Shown here one piece after another: positions 1,989-59,625 of a stretch of DNA of 64,000 nt. How positions within the stretch are numbered: the first letter of the stretch is position 1; every line of letters starts with the position of its first letter. Under the pieces are notes generated by a model. That model did not search any database. It was not told where the DNA came from and saw only the letters and a program-made list of their open reading frames with translations. The translations under genes and the position numbers were made by a program. Source of the stretch: Heteronotia binoei (taxonomy: Eukaryota); the NCBI RefSeq assembly GCF_032191835.1, contig NC_083239.1, positions 32,922,001 to 32,986,000 on the forward strand, in the 5' to 3' direction.

Positions 1989-2689
1989 ACATAGACCTCC
2001 ATCATGCTTTTTTAAAAGGAGCCCCAGAGGTCTACAAGGCAGGAAACTGTCCCCATGGTAACCAAGAGTTGGTTAGCAGGAGACACAGAGGCAAGGCTTC
2101 AGAACTTGGAAGGGAAGCTGGGAGTATTGACACTCTCAGTGGGCAATTCCTACAAAGGTCAGATAGTGGCGGTGGTTGACAAGACAGCGAAAAACATCTC
2201 TCCAGGTTCTGTGCAAACCTTAGAGGGCAGGGTGGAAGAGGACCTGCAGGCTGAGGCAGGACTGTTCCACCACTTGAAGGAAGGATTGTTTTCTGACTGA
2301 ACCTGTTTCTGCACTCCAAGCAATTATCAGTTTCTCCCTTAAGGGAACTGGCATCTGTGAAATATCATTCATTCTCTGACTGAAGGTCTTTGCAAAGGAC
2401 ACACTATCATTTCCCTTTCCCCTAGAGCAGGGGTGGCCAACGGTAGTTCTCCAGATGTTTTTTGCCTACAACTCCCATCAGCCCCAGCCAGCATGGCCAA
2501 TGGCTGGGCTGATGGGAGTTGTAGGCAAAAGACATCTGGAGAACTACCGTTGGCCACCCCTTCCCTAGAGTGGATTCTCTGGCTCACACACAGGCCTTTC
2601 CCCCCTTCTTTTTTTGATTGACCTTTCTTGGAGAGGGGGTTTCAAGGGACTCTCCTCCTAGCAAGGAATGGGCTTCTCCCACTTCTTAC

Positions 2690-5330
<2,641 letters not shown>

Positions 5331-5557
5331 ATCCTTCGCCTTCTCTTGGGTTGCCTCTGACTTTGGAAAGATACCTTCACTCACGTGGCTATGAAGAGGA
5401 AGATGAAAGGAAATCAGAAAGACAGAAAGAGAACAAAAGAGAACAGAGCTACATCACTAACCCTGGTCAAGAAACACTGAAGGATTGGACTGATGGATCA
5501 GAAGGAGCGTCACTCTTGCAATTTTTCAGATCAGGATTAATGTCATTGTGCTATATT

Positions 5558-5738
5558 CAAGGCTTTTTTTGTACCAGGAACTCCTTTGTGTATTAGGCCA
5601 CACCTCCCTTTTGCAGCCAATCCTCCAAGAGCTTACAGGGCTGTTAGTACAGGGCGTACTGTAATCTCCAGGAGAATTGGCTATATCAGGGAGGTGTGGC
5701 ATAATATGCAAAGGAGTTCCTGCTACAAAAAAGCCCTG
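5558..5738. mobile_element. Palindromic hAT MITE
   Basis: 8-bp TSD GCTATATT (5550-5557, 5739-5746); empty site in the gene C paralog near 38150. Confidence 0.9.
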
Positions 5739-6204
5739 GCTATATTACATATCAAGCTTTGTTCGATATGCCTATTTGGTCCTTCAGGAAACTGTCTTGT
5801 TCAGCTCTTTAAAAGTGTGCTGCAGATTATATGATCTTGGCTTTAATGAATTGGAAATCAGTCTGTCCTAGGGGCTACGTCTCAGTGTAAACTGGAGCCC
5901 TGGATGTTAATGGCTCCTGTATTGCCAATATCTCCTCAATAGTGTGGAAATGTTAGGCTACAGCCAGCAGACGTCAGGGCAGAGGGTCTGCCTGGGAGCA
6001 GGGGGAGGCAGTGAACTCCCAGGGAAAAGTCAGATGGGGGGAATATTGGCACAAATGCATGGCAAGTGAAGGAACCAACTGGCATGAATGTCCCCTCCCC
6101 TCCTGATCAGGCACGGGACTCCTTTCCGGGCCTCCCTAAGACCACCATGGCTGAGAATTTATTTTTATTTACAAAACTCAGATTCCACCTGTCTGTCCCC
6201 ACAA

Positions 6205-6582
6205 GGGCCACCAAGGCAACTCATATAGTTTGGGAGTACTATTGGAGCCTTCCTTAACGATGGAGGCTCAAGTAGCAGCCACTGCTAAGTCTGCATTCTT
6301 TCATCTTAGGCGGGCGAGGCAGTTGGCTCCTTTCCTGGAACATGACGATCTAGCAATGGTGATTCATGCAACGGTCACCTCGAGGTTGGACTACTACAAT
6401 GCCCTCTACATGGGGTTGCCCTTGTGCCGAACCCGGAAGCTGCAGTTAGTGCAGAATGCCGCTGCCCGGCTGTTATTAGGGCTCCCAAGATGGGAGCACA
6501 TTCGGCCGGGGCTCTGGAGTCTGCACTGGCTGCCGATAATATACCAAGTCCGATACAAGGTGCTGGTTATTACCTTTAAAGC
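6205..6582 (+). mobile_element. L2 LINE ORF2 3' fragment, left part
   Basis: IHATVTSRLDYYNALYMGLP...LQLVQNAAARLL...LHWLPI is the L2 RT C-terminus; continues in frame at 7930. Confidence 0.9.
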
Positions 6583-7111
6583 TAGGGTTGCCAAGTCCAA
6601 TTTAAGAAATATCTGGGGACTTTGGGGGTGGAGCCAGGAGACTTTGGGGGTGGAGCCAGGAGACATTGGGGCGGAGCCAAGATCAAGGCTGTGACAAGCA
6701 TCATGAACTCCAAAGGGAGTTCTGGCCATCACATTTAAAGGGACGGCGCACCTTTTCAATTCCTTCCTCCCATAGGAAGTAATGAAGGATAGGGGCACCT
6801 TCTTTTGGGGCTCATAGAATTGGACCCCCTGGTCCAATCGTTTTGAAACTTGGGGGGTATTTTGGGGAGAGGCACTAGATGCTGTACTGAACATTTGGTG
6901 CCTCTACCTCAAAAAACAGCCCCCCCCAGAGCCCCAGATACCCACGGATCAATTCTCCATTATTTCCTATGGGAATACATCTCCATAGGGAATAATAAAG
7001 TTCCCAGCAGACATTCCCCTCCCCTCCCCCCGCTTTCTGATGACCCTGAAGTGGGGGGAGGGCCTCCAAACCAGGGGATCCCCTGCCCCCACCTGGGGAT
7101 TGGCAACCTTA

Positions 7112-7870
7112 CAGTGGAAGGAGGAGGAGGACGGCCCGGACCCCCCTCGGGCGACCCCCACCCCCCGGGCAGGGCGAGGAGGGGATACCTTGCTCGCTGG
7201 GGATGTAGGTCTCGTTGTAGTCTTCCTCCAAGATGAGCTGGTCCCCGATCCGGATGGTGGCGGCGGCAGCAGGACCAGCCATGGCAGCAGCCTGCCCACC
7301 AGCGGCTCCCCCCCCCTGCCCCAAGTGGACACGGGGGGCAGGCAAGGAGCCACCCCCACCCGCCCTCCCTGGGAGCCGCGCTCCCACCCCCCAAGAGGCC
7401 AAGCCAGCAGCTGCCGGGTGGCGGGCGAGCGAGCGGGTAGCGAAGGCCTCTGCTTGGCGTTGCCCCGGAGACCGAGCAGGAAGGGGAGGCACTTCCACGC
7501 GTGGCCTGGAGTGGCCATCTCGCTTTTCCTCCCCCCCCCACCCCAGGAGGCCGCGCCAGAAGGTGGGCGGGCAGCTAAGGCGTCTGACTTGGGTTGCCCC
7601 GGAGACCAAGTAGGAAGAGGAGGAGGCACTTCCCAGCGCAGCCTAGAGCGGCACACTCTCTCTCCCACCCCACTCCCCACCACGCTCCTGGCCCGCCCCC
7701 TCCCCCGCCGCCGCCCCCCTCCCCGCCCCCTCCCAGCTGCTCCTCCAAGATGGGCCCAGCCTGAGCCCATCTCGGAGGAGCAGCCATGGTGAAGCGGAGA
7801 AGGGGCGGCTCGCCACGCTCCTTTGCGCCGTTTTTCCCCTCGCTTCCGTTTCTTTGGGGAGCGGGGGAAG
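7112..7870 (-). promoter_or_regulatory. Captured CpG-island / promoter-like segment
   Basis: Very GC- and CpG-rich, many GC boxes, CGGAAG ETS-like motif near 7843-7848 on the minus strand; lies 5' of the CEP164-like exon. Activity not demonstrated. Confidence 0.65.
7189..7282 (-). pseudogene. CEP164: CEP164 first coding exon fragment (transposed copy)
   Basis: GCCATGG Kozak, [31 protein letters not shown], then phase-1 G|GTATC; recalled human N-terminus [28 protein letters not shown]; no further CEP164 exon seen. Confidence 0.88.
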
Positions 7871-7921
7871 AGGCTGGAAAGCCTGGGGTCCCCCGCTAGG
7901 GCGGGAGGGTTAGGAACCCTA

Positions 7922-8390
7922 TTTAAAGCCCTATATGGCCTAGGACCTGCCTACCTTAGGGACAGTCTCTCCCCGCATGTTCCCCAGAGAGTACTGAGAT
8001 CGGGCTCTCAAAATCTGCTTGCTATCCCCGGGCCAAAGGAGGCCCATCTTAAATCCACCAGGGACAGGGCCTTTTCTGTAACGGCTCCTTGCTGGTGGAA
8101 CCAGCTGCCGGAAGAGGTGAGGGCCCTGAGGGACCTTGGCCAGTTCTGCAGGGCCTGTAAGACAGCCCACTTCCGGCTGGCCTATAATTAACTGGCATTA
8201 GAAATTCTATAGAAGTTCAGTGTAGTATTTTGATAGATCGCTGTTTAAATGTTTTATTATTTTACTGTTTTAACTGTTGTAATTGATGTATTTTAAATTT
8301 AAAATTCTATGTTAGATTTTATATGTTGTGAGCCACCCTGAGCCACTTCGGTGGGAAGGGCGGGATATAAACTGAAATAAACTTAAACTT
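7922..8390 (+). mobile_element. L2 LINE 3' fragment, right part with tail
   Basis: FKALYGLGPAYLRDSLSP...LRS...RAFSVTAPCWWNQLP, then the L2 tail GCCACCCTGAGCC...GGGCGGGATATAAA. Confidence 0.9.
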
Positions 8391-11194: not shown

Positions 11195-12399
11195 TTTGTG
11201 TTAAAACAATTTTATTTAGTAACATATGGTAACAATATCTATTTCTTGCATCATTAATAACTTCTTTTTATCTATCCCATATATTACTTTCTAACCACCC
11301 CTCCCCCCGTTACTTGTCCCCCGCCGGTGTTATTTACTTAAAATACTAATATTTAAAGTTACCCTTAACTAGTAAAAACAAATATTAATATTCTTCTTTC
11401 TTGTAAGACTTAATCATTATCAAAAATTGTCCAATGCCCTTTTATTTTCCACTCTTTTTCTAGAGATTTTACCTAAAATAGGGGCTGATCATAACCCAAT
11501 AATGTGGATTACAAAATTGTCTAAAAAGTTGAGAAGATGGAGATTAAATGAAGATTTACTACAGAATAAAGAAATAGTGACATCTCTAGAAAATGAAACT
11601 AAAGCTTTCTTCCAAATAAACGATAAAGAAGATATAGAATTTCAGACAGTGTGGGATGCTTATAAATAGGCTTCCCAATCCCCAGGTCCCAGCGGGGGAT
11701 CCCCTGGTTTTACAGGCTTCCCCCCTCCCCCAGCCAGCTGGCCGGTGGGGGAAGCTCCACCCCCATAGCTATTATGCACCTCCAGGAACAATTCCCATAG
11801 GAAATGATGGGGAATTGATCCGCGGGTGTCAGGGGCTCTGGGGGGCCTGTCTTTTGAGGTAGAGGCGCCAAATTTTCAGTATAGCATCTAGTGCCTCTCC
11901 CCAAAATACCTCCCAAGTTTCAAAAAGATTGGACCAGGGGGTCCAATTCTATGAGCCGCAAAAGAAGGTGCCCCTATCCTTCATTATTTCCTATGGAAGG
12001 AAGGCATTCTAAAAGGTGTGCTGTCCCTTTAAATGTGATGGCCAGAACTCCCTTGGAGTTCAATTATGCTTGTCACACTCTTGCTCCTGGCTCCACCCCC
12101 AGTGTCTCCTGGCTTCAACCCCAGTCTCCTGGCTCCACCCCCAGAGTCCCCAGATATTTCTTGAATTGGACTTGGCAACCCTACTTATAAAGCAGTAATG
12201 AGAGGAATATTGATTACATTGAATAATAAAGATAAGAGGGCAAAAGAAAAACAGATGTTGGACATTCAAAATGAAATAAAGAAAAAAGAAGGGGAACTGA
12301 GAAATTCCTTTCCACTTTTTAGCACTGTCCTTTAAATTTACAAGGTCCAGATTTCGCCCCTTCTCCCCTTCTTCCAAGCTTTCTAGATTTCCATTTCCC
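11195..12399. mobile_element. Rearranged L1/Tx1-like LINE fragments
   Basis: Minus-strand 3' tail (~11195-11460) joined to a plus-strand ORF2 piece (DHNPI...WRLNEDLL...VWDAYK|AVMRG) split by a hAT MITE. Confidence 0.7.
11667..12183 (-). mobile_element. Non-autonomous hAT (TAGGGTTGCCAA family)
   Basis: 8-bp TSD CTTATAAA (11659-11666, 12184-12191); interrupts L1 at WDAYK/AVMRG. Confidence 0.92.
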
Positions 12400-12526: not shown

Positions 12527-14110
12527 ATGGCGGCACTGGCTCCAGACAATGGAGAGCCCAATATCCCACCAGACGAGGAACCCCTCGACCCGAAGGTAAC
12601 TGGAGCGAGGAGGAAGATTAAAGTCCCCGCGCCGTTTTCCGTCGACGCCTTCCCCTCACGAACCTGGAGCCCGAGGAAGTCTACGGCCGCTATGGAGGCC
12701 GCGGAGCAACGCTACCGAATCATCGCCACGGGCGGGGGAGAAGGGGACGAGGGCGAGTCCAGAGATGAGGGGCTCGGGACTTATGGCGGAGGGGACCCGA
12801 TCCGAACACTACGCAACGAGTTGTTCGATTGGGTGAAAGAGATCCACGACGAGGTTCATGCCTCCAGGACCCTGATGGCAGAGGAGATGCAGCAGAACCT
12901 GGGAGCGGTCCACGACCAAATACGCACGCTCCAAGGGGTCGTGGCAGCAGGACAACTCCCGGGGGGGGACCGGCGGGCCCTCCGGCGGGTGCGCCGGCCG
13001 GGCCCCCGGCAGGACCTCCCGCGGGGGCGCCGGCTGGTCCGCCAGTAGGACCCCCCGCGGGGCCGCTGGCTGGCCCTCCAGCGGGACCCCCGGTTGGGCC
13101 CCCCGGCCGGTCCTCCAGTAGGTCCCCCGGCTGGACCGCCCGCGGGACCGCCGGCCGGCCCTCCGGTGGGACCCCCGGCCCCACCACCCGGTGGGCCGGT
13201 AGCTCCGGTACTCCCGGCCCCCATCGCCCCGGCCGGAGGGGACAGGGGAGGACACCGGGAGCTGAAAATCACCTTCGACGGGGACGGAGAAGCGGTGGAG
13301 TACTTTACGATCCAGTGCAACACGTTTTTCACGCACTGGGGAGCGGGGTACCCCACGGAAGCAAGCCGCATAGACCACATCGCCTCCAGACTGAGAGGAC
13401 CAGCTCAGAAATGGTACGTGGGGCTCTATACGGGGCGGAAACCCGAGCTAGCCACCTTGGCCGACTTTCTACAGGCGATGCTCTGTCAGTACGGAGACCC
13501 GCTGCGAGAGGAGAAAGCCATCGCGGCCCTACAAAGGATAGAGCAAGGCAACCGCACCACCCGAGAGTACGCTACCGAATTCATGGGCCACTGCGCGGCT
13601 GCCAGGGGATGGAATGAAGTAATGAAATACACCGCGTTCAAGAACGGCCTGAACGCGAACATCTTAGACCGGTGCTACCACCAGGGAAGACCAGACACCC
13701 TGGTAGGATGGATCCAACTAGCCGGGGAGGTAGAGACCGACCTCCAGCACGTCGGGATGCGACGCCAGCAACAAAGCAAGAAGGGAGGGAGGTCGAGCCC
13801 CTCGCCGAGCAAGACGGAAGGGAAGCGGGGCCCCGCAACCTCAACCCCCTCGACCACAGTGCGGAAGTGCTTCAGGTGTGGGGATCCGAATCACCTGGCC
13901 GCCAACTGCCCAGGGAAGCCGACACCAACTCCGACGCAGCCCAAACCGACGCCCACCGCACCGAAGAAGAAAGGCGGGCGAGCGAAGGAGCCCAGTCGGG
14001 GCACCGTCGCCACTTCCTTGGCGATTGACGAGGATATTACCACCATAGAAGAATCCAGCGAGGAGTCCTGGGATCAGGAGTCGGCGGGAAACGACAGCGA
14101 CCTGCTTTAA
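12527..14110 (+). CDS. Gag (two compensating homopolymer frameshifts)
   Basis: ORFs 12527 and 13094 are in the same frame; (GPPA)n linker, retrotransposon capsid (FDGDGEAVEYF...LRGPAQKWY), CCHC knuckle CFRCGDPNHLAANC. Confidence 0.9.
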
Positions 14111-14147
14111 CCAGTGCCGCGAAGCAGGTCGATAAAACGCCGGCACT
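14086..14147 (+). promoter_or_regulatory. -1 ribosomal frameshift signal (slippery site plus H-type pseudoknot)
   Basis: G GGA AAC at 14086-14092; stem 1 14098-14107/14122-14131; stem 2 14113-14119/14141-14147; pol is in the -1 frame and open across the site. Confidence 0.85.
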
Positions 14148-17100
14148 ACTAACGGTGAGAGTTACCGGGGGGCTATTGTTCATGGCGGTCACCCTTTTGA
14201 ACCCCAACTTGAAAAGATTTATGCACGCCCGGGCCCTAATTGACTCTGGGTGCACAAGGGACATCATCACCCCACGCTTGGTGGAAGCGCTAGGGTTAGC
14301 CACATCTCCCATTCCCCACCCCATCCAATTTGAACAAATGGACGGGTCACCCATGAGGGGGGAACCGTGCACCCTAGAGACCCAGGCCACCCCTGTGGGG
14401 ACCGAAGAACACTGGGGGGTAGAAACTTTTGTCATAGCCCCTTCCTGCTCCTTCGATGTGGTGGTGGGATCGGGATGGCTAGCAAGACACCAACCGGACA
14501 TTCGATGGGCAGAGCAGATCGTGCGGTTCCCGGACTGGCGGTGTGAACACCACCACTGGAGACCCGAGTGGGGCCCGAAAGCACCCCCGCAGAATGAGAG
14601 ACTTTGCCTCACCCTCGAGGAGATAGGATCGATCCCCAAAGAATACAGGGACTTAAGGAAAGCCTTTAGCGAGCGGGAGGCGGACGAACTCCCCCCGCAC
14701 CGCCCCACAGACTGTGCCATCGAACTCATCCCCGGGCAGACCCTACCAAAGGCAAAGTTGTATTCCATGGGTTGGGCAGAGAAAGCAGAACTGAGAAAAT
14801 TCATTGACAAAAATTTGAAACGGGGCTTTATTCGACCAGCCACGGCCCCCCATGCAGCCCCTGTACTATTCTGCAAGAAAAAGGACGGGGGGCTTAGACT
14901 TTGCACAGATTTTCGCGGGATAAACGGGATTTCTATGTCCAATGCTTACCCGATCCCGTTGATAAGGGACCTTTTGAACACAGTGGCCGAGGGCAAGATC
15001 TTCACTAAGCTCGATCTCAGAGACGCGTACTTTCGCGTGCGGATTAAGGAAGGAGACGAGTGGAAGACTGCGTTCAACACACCTATGGGACAGTTTGAGT
15101 ATCTAGTGATGCCATTCGGGCTCCAGGGAGCGCCGGGGGTTTTTATGAACTTTATAAATGAAGTGTTGAGAGAGTTTCTGTTTAAGGGGGTGGTGGTGTA
15201 CCTTGATGACATCATTATCTATTCAAAGGATCTTGAATCCCATGTGCCGCTCGTGCGAAAAGTATTGACCACCCTGTGTAAGAACAAATTGTATGCCAAA
15301 CTGTCTAAATGTGAATTCCACAAGACGGAACTAGACTACTTGGGGTTCCGAGTGTCGGGGGAGGGACTTGCAATGGATCCGGCAAAAATCCAAGCCGTTC
15401 TAGATTGGGAACCACCCCGAACCCGACGGCAGTTACAATCTTTTCTCGGGTTCGCCAATTTCTACCGCGGATTCATTAAGGGGTTCACCCGGGTGATGCT
15501 CCCCCTCACGGAGCTCCTAAAAACGAAGGGGAGGGGGGAAGCGGCAAAAAAACCCGGGGCGCGCTTGGTCTGGACGTCGGAATGCCACCGGGCTTTCCAA
15601 GAGCTTAAGCAACTCTTCACCTCTGAACCGATACTGGCTCACCCCAATGAATTAAAACCCTTTGTGGTGCAATGCGACGCCTCCGACGTCGCCGTAGGAG
15701 CCATATTGATGCAGAGGAACGAGGAAGGGGAACTACGTCCCTGCGCCTATATCTCCCACAAATTCTCAAACGAACAAAGAAACTGGTCGGTGTGGGACAA
15801 AGAGGCTTTTGCTGTAATGTTTGCCTTGAAAACTTGGAGATCCTGGTTAGAAGGAGCCCGAGTCCCCTTTGAAATTTGGACCGACCACAAAAATTTGGAA
15901 GCACTCACGGGCCGCCGCAAACTAACGGCCAAACAAATTCGGTGGGCGGGATTCTTTGCAAAATTTGACTTCGTGCTGAAACACATCCCAGGCACTAAGA
16001 ACTTTTTAGCTGACGCGCTATCGCGCATGCCCCAGCACGAGAGCCAACGAGAGGAAGTAATCGACTCTCTCATCCCCCCTTCAGCAGTCGCGGGAGGGGT
16101 CACTACTCGTTCAGGGAAAAAGACCGGGGCCCCAGAATTGCCACAAAAGGAACGCTTTGCGTCAGAGGCAGACTTAGAAGGAGCAGAGCGCCCCGACGGG
16201 CTCGAGCAGGGGGAGGGTGGACTTTGGCTCCATAAAGGGAAAATCTGTGTGCCCAGGTCTATGAGGAAGGAGGTATTAGAACAGAGCCACTCCAACCGCC
16301 TGGCCGGTCACTTTGGGTATGTGAAAACTCTCCACCTCATCACCCGACAATTTTGGTGGCCAAAACTAAAAAGGGACGTTTCTGAATTCGTGCTAGCATG
16401 CCCCACGTGCATCATGTCCAAACGCAGGGGAGGAAAACCCCCCGGCCACCTCGTCCCTCTCCCCACGGCCAACCGACCCTGGGCCGTTGTGTCGATGGAT
16501 TTTATAGTGGAACTTCCTCCATCCCAAGGGAAAACCGTGATACTGGTGGTGGTTGACACTTTTTCAAAACAAGCCCACTTCATCCCCTGCAAGAAATTAC
16601 CCACCGCCAAAAAATTAGCCCAACTTTTCTTTAATCACGTGGTCCGCCTACACTCATTCCCCGAGAAGGTCATTAGTGACCACGGGCCACAGTTCGTTGC
16701 CAACTTCTGGCGGGAGTTTTGCAAGCTAGCTGGCATCGAACAAGGTCTTAGCTCAGCCTACCACCCGCAAATGGACGGACAGACAGAGAGAGTAAACGGG
16801 CTTCTCGAGCAATACCTGAGGTGTTACATTAATTACCAACAAACCAATTGGGTGGAGCTTCTGCCATTCGCAGAATATGGATATAATAACAGCCTCCATA
16901 GCTCCACCAAAACCTCCTCTTTCCAAATAGTCAACGGCTACGAAGGGAAGCCTTTCCCAAACCTCCCCCTTCCGGCCGGACCAAAAGAGCCCACTTCTTG
17001 CCTCCAGTGGTGGGAGGGGATAAGGGAGGGATGGAAAGTGATTCAAGAAAACCTGGAAGAAGCAAAAAGGGAGTATAAGCGGTACTTTGACAAAAAGCAT

Positions 17101-17361
17101 GCCCCGCAGTGGGAAATGAAAGAGGGAGAGACAGTGTTCCTATCCACCAAAAACTTGCCCCTTCCGCAAGGGTGCTGCAAGCTTGCCCTCAAGTATCTGG
17201 GGCCATTCAAAATAAAGAAAGTTATCAACAAAGTGACTGTGGAACTGGAGTTACCTAAATCCCTAAGTAAGATCCACCCTGTTTTTCATTGCAGCCTTCT
17301 TCGCAAGGATCCTGGAGCTACGCAATTCCATCCTCGCCCCCCAGAGCCGCCTCCGACATAA
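14086..17361 (+). CDS. Pol: protease, RT, RNase H, integrase
   Basis: ALIDSGCT, YLDD, RNase H DASDVAVG, integrase HHCC and DDE, GPF motif; uninterrupted for over 1000 codons. Confidence 0.96.
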   Translation, partial: GKRQRPALTSAAKQVDKTPALLTVRVTGGLLFMAVTLLNPNLKRFMHARALIDSGCTRDIITPRLVEALGLATSPIPHPIQFEQMDGSPMRGEPCTLETQATPVGTEEHWGVETFVIAPSCSFDVVVGSGWLARHQPDIRWAEQIVRFPDWRCEHHHWRPEWGPKAPPQNERLCLTLEEIGSIPKEYRDLRKAFSEREADELPPHRPTDCAIELIPGQTLPKAKLYSMGWAEKAELRKFIDKNLKRGFIRPATAPHAAPVLFCKKKDGGLRLCTDFRGINGISMSNAYPIPLIRDLLNTVAEGKIFTKLDLRDAYFRVRIKEGDEWKTAFNTPMGQFEYLVMPFGLQGAPGVFMNFINEVLREFLFKGVVVYLDDIIIYSKDLESHVPLVRKVLTTLCKNKLYAKLSKCEFHKTELDYLGFRVSGEGLAMDPAKIQAVLDWEPPRTRRQLQSFLGFANFYRGFIKGFTRVMLPLTELLKTKGRGEAAKKPGARLVWTSECHRAFQELKQLFTSEPILAHPNELKPFVVQCDASDVAVGAILMQRNEEGELRPCAYISHKFSNEQRNWSVWDKEAFAVMFALKTWRSWLEGARVPFEIWTDHKNLEALTGRRKLTAKQIRWAGFFAKFDFVLKHIPGTKNFLADALSRMPQHESQREEVIDSLIPPSAVAGGVTTRSGKKTGAPELPQKERFASEADLEGAERPDGLEQGEGGLWLHKGKICVPRSMRKEVLEQSHSNRLAGHFGYVKTLHLITRQFWWPKLKRDVSEFVLACPTCIMSKRRGGKPPGHLVPLPTANRPWAVVSMDFIVELPPSQGKTVILVVVDTFSKQAHFIPCKKLPTAKKLAQLFFNHVVRLHSFPEKVISDHGPQFVANFWREFCKLAGIEQGLSSAYHPQMDGQTERVNGLLEQYLRCYINYQQTNWVELLPFAEYGYNNSLHSSTKTSSFQIVNGYEGKPFPNLPLPAGPKEPTSCLQWWEGIREGWKVIQENLEEAKREYKRYFDKKHAPQWEMKEGETVFLSTKNLPLPQGCCKLALKYLGPFKIKKVINKVTVELELPKSLSKIHPVFHCSLLRKDPGATQFHPRPPEPPPT

Positions 17362-21990: not shown

Positions 21991-29620
<7,630 letters not shown>

Positions 29621-30943: not shown

Positions 30944-31429
30944 TAGGGTTGCCAAGTCGAATTCAAGAAATATCTGGGGACTTTGGGGGTGGAGCCAAGA
31001 TCAAGGCTGTGACAAGCATAATTGAACTCCAAAGGGAGTTCTGGCCATCACATTTAAAGGGACGGCACACCTTTTCAATGCCTTCCTTCCATAGGAAATA
31101 ATGAAGGATAGGGGTACCTTCTTTTGGGGCTCATAGAATTGGACACACTGGTCCAATATTTTTGAAACTTGGGGGGTATTTTGGGGAGAGGCACTAGATG
31201 CTATACTGAAAATTTGGTGCATCTACCCCAAAAAACAGCTCCCCCAGAGCCCCAGATACCCGCGGATCAATTCTCCATGATTTTCTATGGGAATAAATCT
31301 CTATAGGGAATAACAGAGTTCCCAGCAGACATTTCCCTCCCCTCCCCCCGCTTTCTGACGACCCTGAAGCGGGGGGAGGGTCTCCAAATCGGGGGATCCC
31401 CTGCCCCCACCTGGGGATTGGCAACCCTA
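30944..31429 (+). mobile_element. Non-autonomous hAT (TAGGGTTGCCAA family)
   Basis: TAGGGTTGCCAA...TTGGCAACCCTA, perfect 8-bp TSD GTACAATG. Confidence 0.93.

Positions 31430-38359: not shown

Positions 38360-43981
<5,622 letters not shown>

Positions 43982-52676: not shown

Positions 52677-59625
<6,949 letters not shown>

What the first reader, a model, noticed from the sequence alone, without database searches (positions are those of the whole stretch)
6583..7921. Composite hAT transposon that captured the CEP164 promoter region and first exon and carried it into a KRAB-ZNF intron
Seen: (1) An L2 is split mid-codon and rejoins perfectly (TFKA|LYG). (2) The 1339-bp insert has an 8-bp TSD TTTAAAGC and termini TAGGGTTGCCAA / TTAGGAACCCTA. 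(3) Its first 529 bp are a complete MITE of a family whose other copies also have 8-bp TSDs (11667, 30944, 49084). (4) After the inner end at 7111 come ~760 bp of CpG island containing the CEP164 exon, then a second hAT-type end. Established: 8-bp TSDs mark hAT elements; Pack-MULE-type gene capture is well known in plants and rarely described in vertebrates. Inference: the transposase bypassed the inner end and used a second end on the far side of the CEP164 promoter, mobilising a host promoter plus exon as a composite transposon. This is a candidate promoter/exon-shuffling system feeding KZFP clusters.
Basis: partly seen in the sequence, partly recalled or inferred. Interest (0 to 1): 0.9.

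Follow-up and report, generated by a model that had tools for sequence, protein, structure and literature searches.

The report
hAT transposon family carrying CEP164 promoter
The 1.3-kb insert is one of about 90 copies of a cut-and-paste (hAT-type) transposon family in this genome that once picked up the promoter and first exon of the CEP164 gene; this is real gene-fragment capture in a vertebrate, but this copy showed no transcription in the RNA sampled.

Summary
A 1339-bp insert (6583-7921) splits a LINE reading frame cleanly, has the 8-bp duplication TTTAAAGC and hAT-type ends, and carries a true CEP164 first exon (PDB CEP164, E 6e-9).

1. It is not a one-off local event. The whole unit is a repeat family of about 70-95 copies, most with their own 8-bp duplications.
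2. The real CEP164 gene lies on another contig (C12:1.2474 Mb), with exon 2 about 100 bp after exon 1. The cargo matches it at 92-97%.
3. The second end is not a cryptic end in the CEP164 promoter. The last ~240 bp (286 bp in the family consensus) are the right end of an abundant sibling hAT family "B" (5,272 pattern hits) that shares the same left end.
4. The parental locus has no matching ends. Intron 1 holds no MITE, and an old MITE without a duplication abuts the promoter within about 8 bp of the capture boundary.

A tree shows a single origin. All copies checked keep the ATG and the GT donor. RNA-seq shows essentially no reads over this copy's cargo, and about a quarter of its CpGs have decayed. 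No link to KZFP clusters is shown.

Other readers of this scan noted further copies and similar cargo-carrying hAT units in this genome. Verdict: a vertebrate "Pack-hAT", a new member of a known kind.

The parts
6575..6582 (.). Left copy of the 8-bp target-site duplication TTTAAAGC
   Evidence: Present once in the paralogous uninterrupted LINE copy in L023.
6583..7111 (+). Module 1: a complete 529-bp hAT MITE ('MITE-A'). Left end TAGGGTTGCCAA at 6583-6594; inner right end TTGGCAACCTTA at 7100-7111 (family consensus TTGGCAACCCTA, a perfect inverted repeat of the left end).
   Evidence: The MITE parts of 40 composites form one clade (100/98) nested among older solo MITE-A copies.
7112..7188 (-). 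Captured 5' part of CEP164 intron 1, including the GT donor at 7188-7187. The capture begins at CAGYGGRAGG, about 30 bp short of exon 2 in the parental gene.
   Evidence: Alignment to C12:1247475-1247545.
7189..7282 (-). Captured CEP164 first coding exon ([31 protein letters not shown] plus 1 nt, phase 1).
   Evidence: PDB CEP164 chains 7nwj/7o3b, E 6e-9. The parental exon is at C12:1247378-1247474. ATG and GT are kept in all ~38 distinct copies examined.
7289..7428 (-). 140-bp GC-rich segment between the ATG and the promoter repeats. It is present in all composite copies and absent from the present parental locus.
   Evidence: Its pattern is found 71 times, all at composite copies.
7429..7669 (-). 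Captured CEP164 promoter region: two ~115-bp tandem units (7433-7542 and 7567-7681).
   Evidence: 88.8% identity to C12:1247141-1247376. 8.1% substitutions against the family consensus, 5.1% at non-CpG sites.
7670..7679 (.). About 10 bp of junction or filler sequence between the CEP164-derived and B-derived parts (boundary approximate).
7680..7921 (+). Module 3: right end of the sibling non-autonomous hAT family 'B-long' (consensus positions 1073-1358). It includes the palindrome 7736-7784 and the terminal TTAGGAACCCTA (7910-7921). It is not CEP164 sequence.
   Evidence: 92-95% identity of the consensus to B-long elements L065 and L074, up to their right ends. A 30-mer from it occurs 5,272 times in the genome, against ~90 composites.
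7922..7929 (.). Right copy of the target-site duplication TTTAAAGC
6230..6582 (+). Left half of the interrupted LINE (L2/CR1-type) ORF2 3' region. The right half is 7930-8190.
   Evidence: The joined flanks translate as one 205-aa ORF.
4776..5381 (-). SCAN-domain exon of the neighbouring minus-strand SCAN-KRAB-ZNF gene (KRAB A-box near 3719). The captured exon lies ~1.8 kb upstream in the same orientation.
   Evidence: Pfam SCAN, E 7.5e-37. KRAB motif scan. RNA depth here is 0.7 or less.

Best explanation
Window 6583-7921 is one insertion of a non-autonomous hAT-type DNA transposon family of about 1.36 kb and roughly 70-95 copies.

The family is a three-part chimera:
(i) a complete 527-bp MITE ('MITE-A') with both of its own ends;
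(ii) about 540 bp transduplicated from the 5' end of the host CEP164 gene on contig C12 (two promoter repeat units, the 5' leader, the first coding exon with ATG and GT donor, and 77 bp of intron 1);
(iii) the right-hand 286 bp of a much more abundant sibling family ('B-long'), whose left ~130-160 bp match those of MITE-A.

Shown: the capture happened once. The unit then moved in trans as a whole, using the MITE-A left end and the B-type right end and making 8-bp duplications, while the intact inner MITE-A right end was skipped. This copy landed in a LINE fragment about 1.2 kb 5' of the SCAN exon of a SCAN-KRAB-ZNF gene.

Inferred:
- The transposase comes from one of the many hAT copies with ~940-aa open frames in the genome.
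- The alternative origin is filler-DNA capture during abortive gap repair (about 35%).
- The cargo in this copy is passenger DNA. It has lost about a fifth of the CpGs of the consensus cargo and showed no transcription in the RNA-seq sampled.

The confidence given applies to the identity, structure, source and amplification of the element, not to the way the chimera was born.
For: - Family and unit: 7112-7921 gave 40 scored hits at 82-93% identity. 18 of 19 fetched loci, and all 18 further ones, hold the entire unit or deletion derivatives of it.
- Copy number: the MITE|CEP164 junction 28-mer occurs 94 times (81 with two mismatches or fewer; reversed control 0).
- Transposition: 15 of 23 copies have perfect and 3 have 7/8 8-bp TSDs, all different from one another.
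- Single origin: 40 composite MITE parts form one clade (100/98) inside older solo copies.
- Source gene: C12 holds exon 1, a ~100-bp intron, exon 2 (PDB CEP164, E 8e-15) and the WW exon.
- Similarity to source: the consensus cargo differs from the parent by 3.2% in intron plus exon and 8.1% in the promoter (1.5% and 5.1% at non-CpG sites).
- Right module: the consensus matches B-long elements at 92-95% up to their ends. B elements have the same termini and 8-bp TSDs. The right-end 30-mer occurs 5,272 times.
- Age: median non-CpG divergence from the consensus is 1.2-2.0%.
- Silence: RNA depth over 7128-7915 is 0.6 or less in three RNA-seq runs, and no splice joint leaves the donor. The window copy keeps 54 of the 67 consensus CpGs; the median across copies is 51.
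- hAT transposases: at least 150 Dimer_Tnp_hAT hits, many within ~940-aa open frames.
- Precedent for the fusion model: Gisby & Catoni 2022 (PMC8903248). Precedent for recombining, cargo-taking lizard hAT families: Novick et al. 2010 (PMC3014272).
Against: - The parental locus in this assembly does not show the predicted intermediate. Intron 1 holds no MITE-A.
- The element abutting the promoter is an old A-type MITE (85% to the consensus, no TSD, a 670-bp internal insert), not a B-long element.
- The 140-bp segment 7289-7428 has no counterpart at the parental locus or anywhere outside the composites, so its CEP164 origin is inferred, not shown.
- The RNA test read only about 6% of three runs of unknown tissue and used a 97% likeness filter, so weak or tissue-specific promoter use is not excluded.
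- Copy count and age come from copies chosen for similarity to this one.
Confidence: 0.88

Rival explanations
1. First reader's model taken literally. A MITE in CEP164 intron 1 and a cryptic hAT-like end native to the CEP164 promoter were used once as a composite transposon, which jumped directly from CEP164 into this KZFP gene.
For: The cargo is truly CEP164-derived and is flanked by hAT-type ends and a TSD.
Against: About 90 copies exist. The right 286 bp, including the end, belong to family B, with 5,272 pattern hits and an independent element structure and TSDs. That segment is absent from 60 kb around the parental gene.
Confidence: 0.03
2. Same family and same source gene, but a different birth. 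The CEP164 fragment was copied in as filler DNA during abortive gap repair or template switching, after excision of a B-type element (or of a MITE-A/B chimera). It did not arise by fusion of neighbouring insertions at the CEP164 locus.
For: - Intron 1 of the parental gene holds no MITE, and no B element lies upstream of it.
- About 10 bp of unassigned filler sits at the cargo|B junction.
- MITE-A and B share 130-160 bp at the left end, which could guide template switching.
- Interrupted gap repair and inter-element recombination are the accepted sources of non-autonomous hAT variants (PMC3014272).
Against: The promoter-side capture boundary lies within about 8 bp of the left end of a hAT MITE at the parental locus. 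Random filler copying does not predict this (rough chance about 3%). The MITE-side junction falls exactly at the MITE's terminal nucleotide, as expected for a true flanking insertion.
Confidence: 0.35
3. The captured CpG-rich promoter plus ATG exon plus splice donor is functional here. It would act as an alternative promoter and first exon for the downstream SCAN-KRAB-ZNF gene, and the family would act as a promoter- and exon-shuffling system.
For: The cargo has the same orientation as the SCAN exon 1.8 kb downstream. ATG and GT are kept in every copy checked. Helitron-borne NUBPL promoter/exon copies do enter host transcripts in bats (PMC4224331).
Against: Read depth over the cargo is near zero and no joint leaves 7188/7189 in three RNA-seq runs. 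The CpG decay is typical of methylated repeats. The exon accumulates non-synonymous and in-frame indel changes freely. Retention of ATG and GT is expected by chance at 1-4% divergence.
Confidence: 0.07
4. Reverse direction or artefact. Either CEP164 took its 5' end from the transposon, or the copies are segmental duplications or mis-assemblies.
For: None beyond the shared sequence.
Against: The exon 1 peptide is conserved with human CEP164. The composite clade is young and nested within the MITE family. Each copy has its own TSD and precise ends. The empty site is shown by paralogous LINE copies.
Confidence: 0.01

Closest known systems
Pack-TYPE transposons of plants, in particular Pack-hAT and the 'neighbouring insertions fuse' model (Catoni 2019; Gisby & Catoni 2022, PMC8903248)
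   Same: A non-autonomous TIR element with an 8-bp TSD carries a host gene fragment internally and has amplified after the capture. Its architecture is two same-orientation transposon modules around host DNA, with the inner end of one module deleted.
   Different: The host is a vertebrate. The left module keeps a perfect inner end that is nevertheless skipped. The two modules belong to different sibling families. The parental locus does not show the intermediate state.
[quoted passage not shown] 2014, PMC4224331)
   Same: The cargo is of the same kind (promoter, first exon and the start of intron 1 of a housekeeping gene), amplified in a vertebrate genome.
   Different: Helitrons move by a rolling-circle mechanism and capture by read-through, with no TIRs or TSD. 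Their copies number about 1000, against about 90 here. Some Helibat cargos are shown in transcripts; none is shown here.
Non-autonomous hobo_AC/hAT families of Anolis carolinensis (Novick et al. 2010, PMC3014272)
   Same: These are squamate hAT families that take up extraneous DNA and swap 5' and 3' parts by inter-element recombination, giving young chimeric families of 1.3-3.4 kb.
   Different: The extraneous DNA reported there is other repeats (Penelope, SINE, CR1, Chapaev). The words 'exon' and 'host gene' do not occur in that paper. Here the cargo is a host promoter and coding exon with an identified source locus.
Ac/Ds macrotransposons and alternative transposition in maize
   Same: Ends of two separate hAT elements are used as one transposon that carries the DNA between them.
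   Different: Those are individual rearrangements, not an amplified family.

Membership tests
hAT superfamily, non-autonomous element | 8-bp target-site duplication | tested here: met
   TTTAAAGC flanks this copy. 15 of 23 composites have perfect and 3 have 7/8 TSDs. 6 of 6 B elements and two solo MITEs in the window also have them.
hAT superfamily, non-autonomous element | Short terminal inverted repeats starting YARNG | tested here: met
   TAGGGTTGCCAA against the reverse complement TAGGG(T/G)TCCCAA matches at 10-11 of 12 positions in the family consensus. The YARNG rule is from my own knowledge.
hAT superfamily, non-autonomous element | A hAT transposase source in the same genome with matching termini | tested here: inconclusive
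   PF05699 gave at least 150 hits, many within ~940-aa open frames.
hAT superfamily, non-autonomous element | No coding capacity of its own | tested here: met
   The unit is fully accounted for by a MITE, the CEP164 fragment and the B right end. The open frames on it are GC-rich artefacts.
Pack-TYPE / transduplicating TIR transposon | The internal segment derives from a host gene that still exists at a separate locus | tested here: met
   CEP164 on C12, with exon 2 (E 8e-15 to PDB CEP164) and the WW exon downstream. The cargo is 92-97% identical to it.
Pack-TYPE / transduplicating TIR transposon | The captured segment was mobilised with the element after capture | tested here: met
   94 junction hits on many contigs, different TSDs and a single clade.
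Pack-TYPE / transduplicating TIR transposon | Transcription or chimeric transcripts of the cargo (frequent, not strictly defining) | tested here: not met
   Depth over 7128-7915 is 0.6 or less and no joint leaves the donor in runs X5-X7. This covers this copy and these samples only.
Composite (macro)transposon born from neighbouring insertions | Two transposon modules in the same orientation flank the host DNA, with an inner end lost or mutated | tested here: met
   MITE-A (left to right), then the cargo, then the B-long right 286 bp. The inner left end of B is absent. The inner right end of MITE-A is intact.
Composite (macro)transposon born from neighbouring insertions | The source locus carries the two flanking insertions | tested here: not met
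   Intron 1 holds no MITE. At the promoter boundary there is an A-type MITE left end about 8 bp beyond the end of homology, without a TSD, and not a B element. That junction is unique in the genome.
MITE (module 1 alone) | Short, non-coding, with TIRs and TSD; many solo copies | tested here: met
   Solo copies with TSDs in the window. 4,753 first-look candidates. Solo copies are older than the composites.

The most novel reading that the evidence does not exclude
The ~90-copy CEP164 cassette keeps promoter, ATG and splice donor in every copy checked. The 5,000-copy family B has a right half that also looks like a CpG island. Together they would form a dispersed reservoir from which some copies are used as alternative promoters or first exons of host genes, including SCAN/KRAB-ZNF genes.
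Probability: 0.12. Interest if true: 0.75.

Novelty: new member of a known kind. Interest (0 to 1): 0.45.

Why it matters
Gene-fragment capture by cut-and-paste transposons is well documented in plants. In vertebrates the documented cases I found are essentially Helitrons.

Here a hAT family with an identified source gene, a single datable capture and about 90 descendants gives a clean vertebrate case. Three things can be studied with it:
- how such chimeras are born, because the source locus keeps a hAT end at the capture boundary;
- how a transposase chooses between an inner and an outer end;
- whether dispersed copies of a housekeeping promoter with an ATG exon and a splice donor ever rewire host genes.

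For this window the practical message is annotation. The 'CEP164 exon' here is transposon cargo, not a gene.

Tried and rejected
- A search for the 7680-7921 segment and the 140-bp segment in 60 kb around the real CEP164 gene found nothing. The only signal was a weak end-to-end match (66%, E 0.002) of the last 67 bp to a MITE right end.
- L006 looked like a possible parental locus because it lacks the MITE. It was rejected: the MITE lies 3.9 kb away, so it is a composite with a nested insertion.
- Horizontal transfer of an already loaded element was considered unlikely. The cargo differs from the host's own intron plus exon by only 1.5% at non-CpG sites.
- A macrotransposon that still carries the promoter|MITE-left-end junction was sought. 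Only the parental locus has that junction.
- A hAT excision footprint in parental intron 1 was looked for by eye. There is only a spaced CAGCGGG repeat, which is not convincing.
- The autonomous partner was sought with PF05699. Hits were listed but their flanks could not be cut out.
- The first literature search was wasted, because 'hAT' matched 'hatchling'.
- Local alignment of the window copy to B-long gave unreliable boundaries in low-complexity sequence. The boundary from the consensus was used instead.
Its single strong hit was then confirmed from the genome sequence against PDB.

Full report
**What is in the window**

The sequence at 6575-7929 reads TTTAAAGC | TAGGGTTGCCAAG ... GGTTAGGAACCCTA | TTTAAAGC. 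Removing 6583-7921 and one copy of the octamer restores a 205-aa LINE ORF (...VLVITFKALYGLGPAYL...). A paralogous LINE copy (L023) has the octamer once at the same place. RNA reads from such paralogues also bridge 6574 to 7922 with 8 shared letters. The insert is therefore a clean hAT-style insertion.

Its first 529 bp are a complete MITE with its own right end at 7100-7111. Solo relatives in the window at 30944-31429 and 11667-12183 have perfect 8-bp TSDs.

From 7112 the GC content rises to 68-75%. The minus strand then carries an ATG exon (7282-7189) ending at a GT donor. Its 31 residues match human CEP164 in PDB entries 7nwj and 7o3b at E 6e-9.

**It is a family, not an event**

Searching 7112-7921 against the window's own genome gave 40 scored hits (of 2,599 first-look candidates) at 82-93% identity on many contigs. 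In 18 of the 19 loci fetched, the match extends over the whole 1339-bp unit and stops at its two ends. The twelve best hits to the MITE part alone are also all composites, as are 18 further, more diverged copies.

- TSDs: of 23 full-length copies, 15 have perfect and 3 have 7/8 matching 8-bp TSDs, each different.
- Copy number: the 28-mer across the MITE|cargo junction occurs 94 times with three mismatches or fewer (81 with two or fewer; reversed-pattern control 0). A 34-mer from the cargo occurs 71 times, always at composite copies. The family therefore has roughly 70-95 copies.
- Age: against a majority consensus built in script, median divergence is 1.6% in the MITE part and 3.8% in the cargo, or 1.2% and 2.0% without CpG sites. 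Other copies are 89-95% identical to the consensus.
- Single origin: a maximum-likelihood tree of the MITE parts puts all 40 composites in one clade (100/98). That clade is nested among solo MITE-A copies with longer branches. There was one origin from within an older MITE family.

**The source gene**

I fetched 60 kb around it. The region contains, on the plus strand:
- exon 1 ([32 protein letters not shown], from 1247378);
- an intron of about 100 bp;
- exon 2 ([35 protein letters not shown]), which matches PDB CEP164 residues 34-68 at E 8e-15;
- the WW exon.

This is the real gene. The window copy has no exon 2. The refuting condition 'only CEP164 exon 1 in the genome' is not met.

The family consensus aligns to this locus in two blocks. 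The first starts in intron 1, about 30 bp short of exon 2, and runs through exon 1 (3.2% substitutions, 1.5% at non-CpG sites). The second covers two ~115-bp promoter repeat units (8.1% and 5.1%). Such similarity in intron and promoter points to capture within this lineage, not import of a loaded element.

Two differences remain. The 140 bp at 7289-7428 are missing from the parental locus and occur nowhere outside the composites. This is probably a later deletion in the gene's leader between short TGGC repeats, but that is an inference. Homology also ends at window ~7669.

**The second end is borrowed from a sibling family**

A 30-mer from the last 60 bp of the unit occurs 5,272 times in the genome, about 55 times more often than the composite. 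Twelve such places were fetched.

They hold elements of 1.0-1.5 kb that begin TAGGGTTGCCAAGTCC and share the first ~130-160 bp with MITE-A. They then differ inside, end ...GGGTTGGGACCCCTA, and have 8-bp TSDs in 6 of 6 cases examined. Two 'B-long' elements (L065, L074) match consensus positions 1073-1358 of the composite at 92-95%, right up to the terminus. Only about 10 bp lie between the end of CEP164 homology and the start of B homology.

The unit is thus MITE-A, then the CEP164 5' fragment, then the B-long right end. The 'second hAT-type end' is a genuine transposon end of a very successful family, not a cryptic end of the CEP164 promoter. Because MITE-A and B share the left end, the composite can equally be described as a B-type element. 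Its interior was replaced by the remainder of a MITE-A plus host DNA.

The inner MITE-A right end is a perfect inverted repeat in the consensus (TTGGCAACCCTA). All ~90 insertions nevertheless used the outer B-type end. The solo MITE-A copies are older than the composites. An inferred explanation is that the transposase active during the burst preferred the B-type right end.

**How the chimera arose is unresolved**

Intron 1 holds no MITE. On the promoter side, an old A-type MITE abuts the promoter with its left end only about 8 bp beyond the last homologous base. It is 85% identical to the composite's MITE, carries a 670-bp internal insert and has no matching TSD. That junction is unique in the genome.

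The near-coincidence of the capture boundary with a hAT cleavage site would arise by chance in roughly 3% of cases, by my rough estimate. The MITE-side junction also lies exactly at the MITE's last base. Both favour a locus-bound origin, in which hAT insertions in the same orientation on both sides of the 5' end were used as one element and the inner left end was lost. This is the model proposed for Pack-TYPE elements in plants (PMC8903248). An exchange of the 3' part with a B element would also be needed, of the kind documented for lizard hAT families (PMC3014272).

The alternative is abortive gap repair with template switching, helped by the shared left end. It fits the absence of intermediates and the filler bases. 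I put these two models at about 50% and 35%.

**What it does here**

The insert lies about 1.2 kb 5' of a SCAN-domain exon (4776-5381, minus strand; Pfam E 7.5e-37). That exon is followed by a KRAB A-box near 3719. The captured promoter and exon point the same way.

All ~38 distinct copies examined keep the ATG and the GT donor and have only in-frame indels. They also carry many amino-acid changes, which gives no sign of constraint.

Three raw RNA-seq runs labelled with the same species were laid on 2400-8300 at 97% likeness or more, with about 6% of each run read. They give depth of 0.6 or less over 7128-7915 and no joint from the donor. The MITE part is covered by reads whose loose ends show that they come from other copies.

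The cargo plus right end has lost about a quarter of its consensus CpGs (median 51 of 67; 54 in this copy), as expected for methylated repeats. I therefore read the cargo as a silent passenger in this copy. The sampling is thin, so exaptation elsewhere is not excluded. Nothing links the family to KZFP clusters in particular, since the copies lie on at least 17 contigs.

**Comparison and novelty**

In mechanism and structure this is a Pack-TYPE (Pack-hAT) element. Pack-hATs are described in maize and rice (PMC8903248). The same kind of cargo (promoter, first exon, start of intron 1) has been amplified in a vertebrate by Helitrons (NUBPL in Myotis, ~1000 copies; PMC4224331). Squamate hAT families are known to take up extraneous DNA and to recombine, but the paper read reports only repeat cargo.

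My searches of the held library found no vertebrate hAT with a captured host promoter and exon. That is not proof of absence, and the family may already sit unnoticed in repeat libraries.

Other readers of this scan noted another copy ('CEP164 promoter ... inside the RNase cluster', s1-333661). They also noted several cargo-carrying or composite hAT units in the same genome, which one follow-up note calls a gecko. I did not test those notes. I noticed independently that the right half of family B is itself CpG-island-like (GC 65-80%, CpG o/e 0.7-0.95), which fits that picture.

Verdict: a real and tidy case, a new member of a known kind, and of moderate interest.

Noticed in passing
L065 (element at 1051-2607 of the locus, minus strand), L074:671-2136, L063:1071-2088; window 7680-7921: Family B (5,272 hits of a 30-mer) has a right half of 700-800 bp that is 65-80% GC with CpG o/e 0.7-0.95, and contains a TGCGCATGCG motif. 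It looks like a CpG-island promoter and may be an earlier host capture. B-long also holds a ~270-bp internal inverted repeat.
   Followed up: partly
L042:6990-8140 (= C12:1245990-1247140): An old A-type hAT MITE abuts the real CEP164 promoter with its left end. Its flanks (CCGCTTGC versus ATTGTCTG or AATGGAAA) show no TSD, and it has a 670-bp internal insert. This suggests a transposon-associated rearrangement or adjacent deletion at the gene's promoter. The gene's leader also lacks 140 bp that all transposon copies have.
   Followed up: partly
window 11667-12183: A 517-bp element with the MITE-A-type left end (at 12183, minus strand) but a B-type right end (TTGGGAAGCCTA) and a perfect TSD CTTATAAA. 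The two kinds of right end are interchangeable on the same left end.
   Followed up: no
L004 and L011 (C5:39315844 and C5:39322083); L026 and L027 (C1:229671574 and C1:229714146): Two composite copies 6 kb apart on C5 both lack matching TSDs, which may reflect a local rearrangement or alternative transposition. Two copies 42 kb apart on C1 are identical, including the TSD CCTCTAAC, so they are a segmental duplication rather than two insertions.
   Followed up: no
window 13094-17358 (+): A Ty3/gypsy-type LTR retroelement with a gag ORF (338 aa) and an uninterrupted 1068-aa pol ORF (RT, RNase H, integrase, SH3_Tf2-1). Described only.
   Followed up: no
window 27570-29381, 42629-43978, 58225-59622 (+); KRAB boxes near 39827 and 55700 (+) and 3719 (-): A cluster of KRAB/SCAN C2H2 zinc-finger genes. 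There are three long zinc-finger exons on the plus strand, two of them preceded by KRAB A-box exons, and a SCAN-KRAB gene on the minus strand at the left edge of the window.
   Followed up: partly
genome-wide, e.g. C10:48526048, C1:35329283, C8:81710164: At least 150 hAT dimerisation-domain hits, dozens of them inside open frames of ~940 aa. The genome seems to hold a recently active autonomous hAT family.
   Followed up: no
composite copies L018, L024, L025, L031, L048-L051, L053, L054, L061, L062 and others: One subfamily of the composite carries a 9-bp in-frame deletion in the captured exon ([13 protein letters not shown] becomes EEDYDIPSEQ). Another lacks consensus positions 1173-1228. Both are useful markers for ordering the amplification.
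   Followed up: no
window 2400-2596, 3385-3581, 5552-5748 and 6537-7127: RNA-seq depth peaks of 8-180x coincide with repeats. Loose ends with low agreement show that the reads come from many other copies. MITE-A sequences are common inside transcripts of this species.
   Followed up: no
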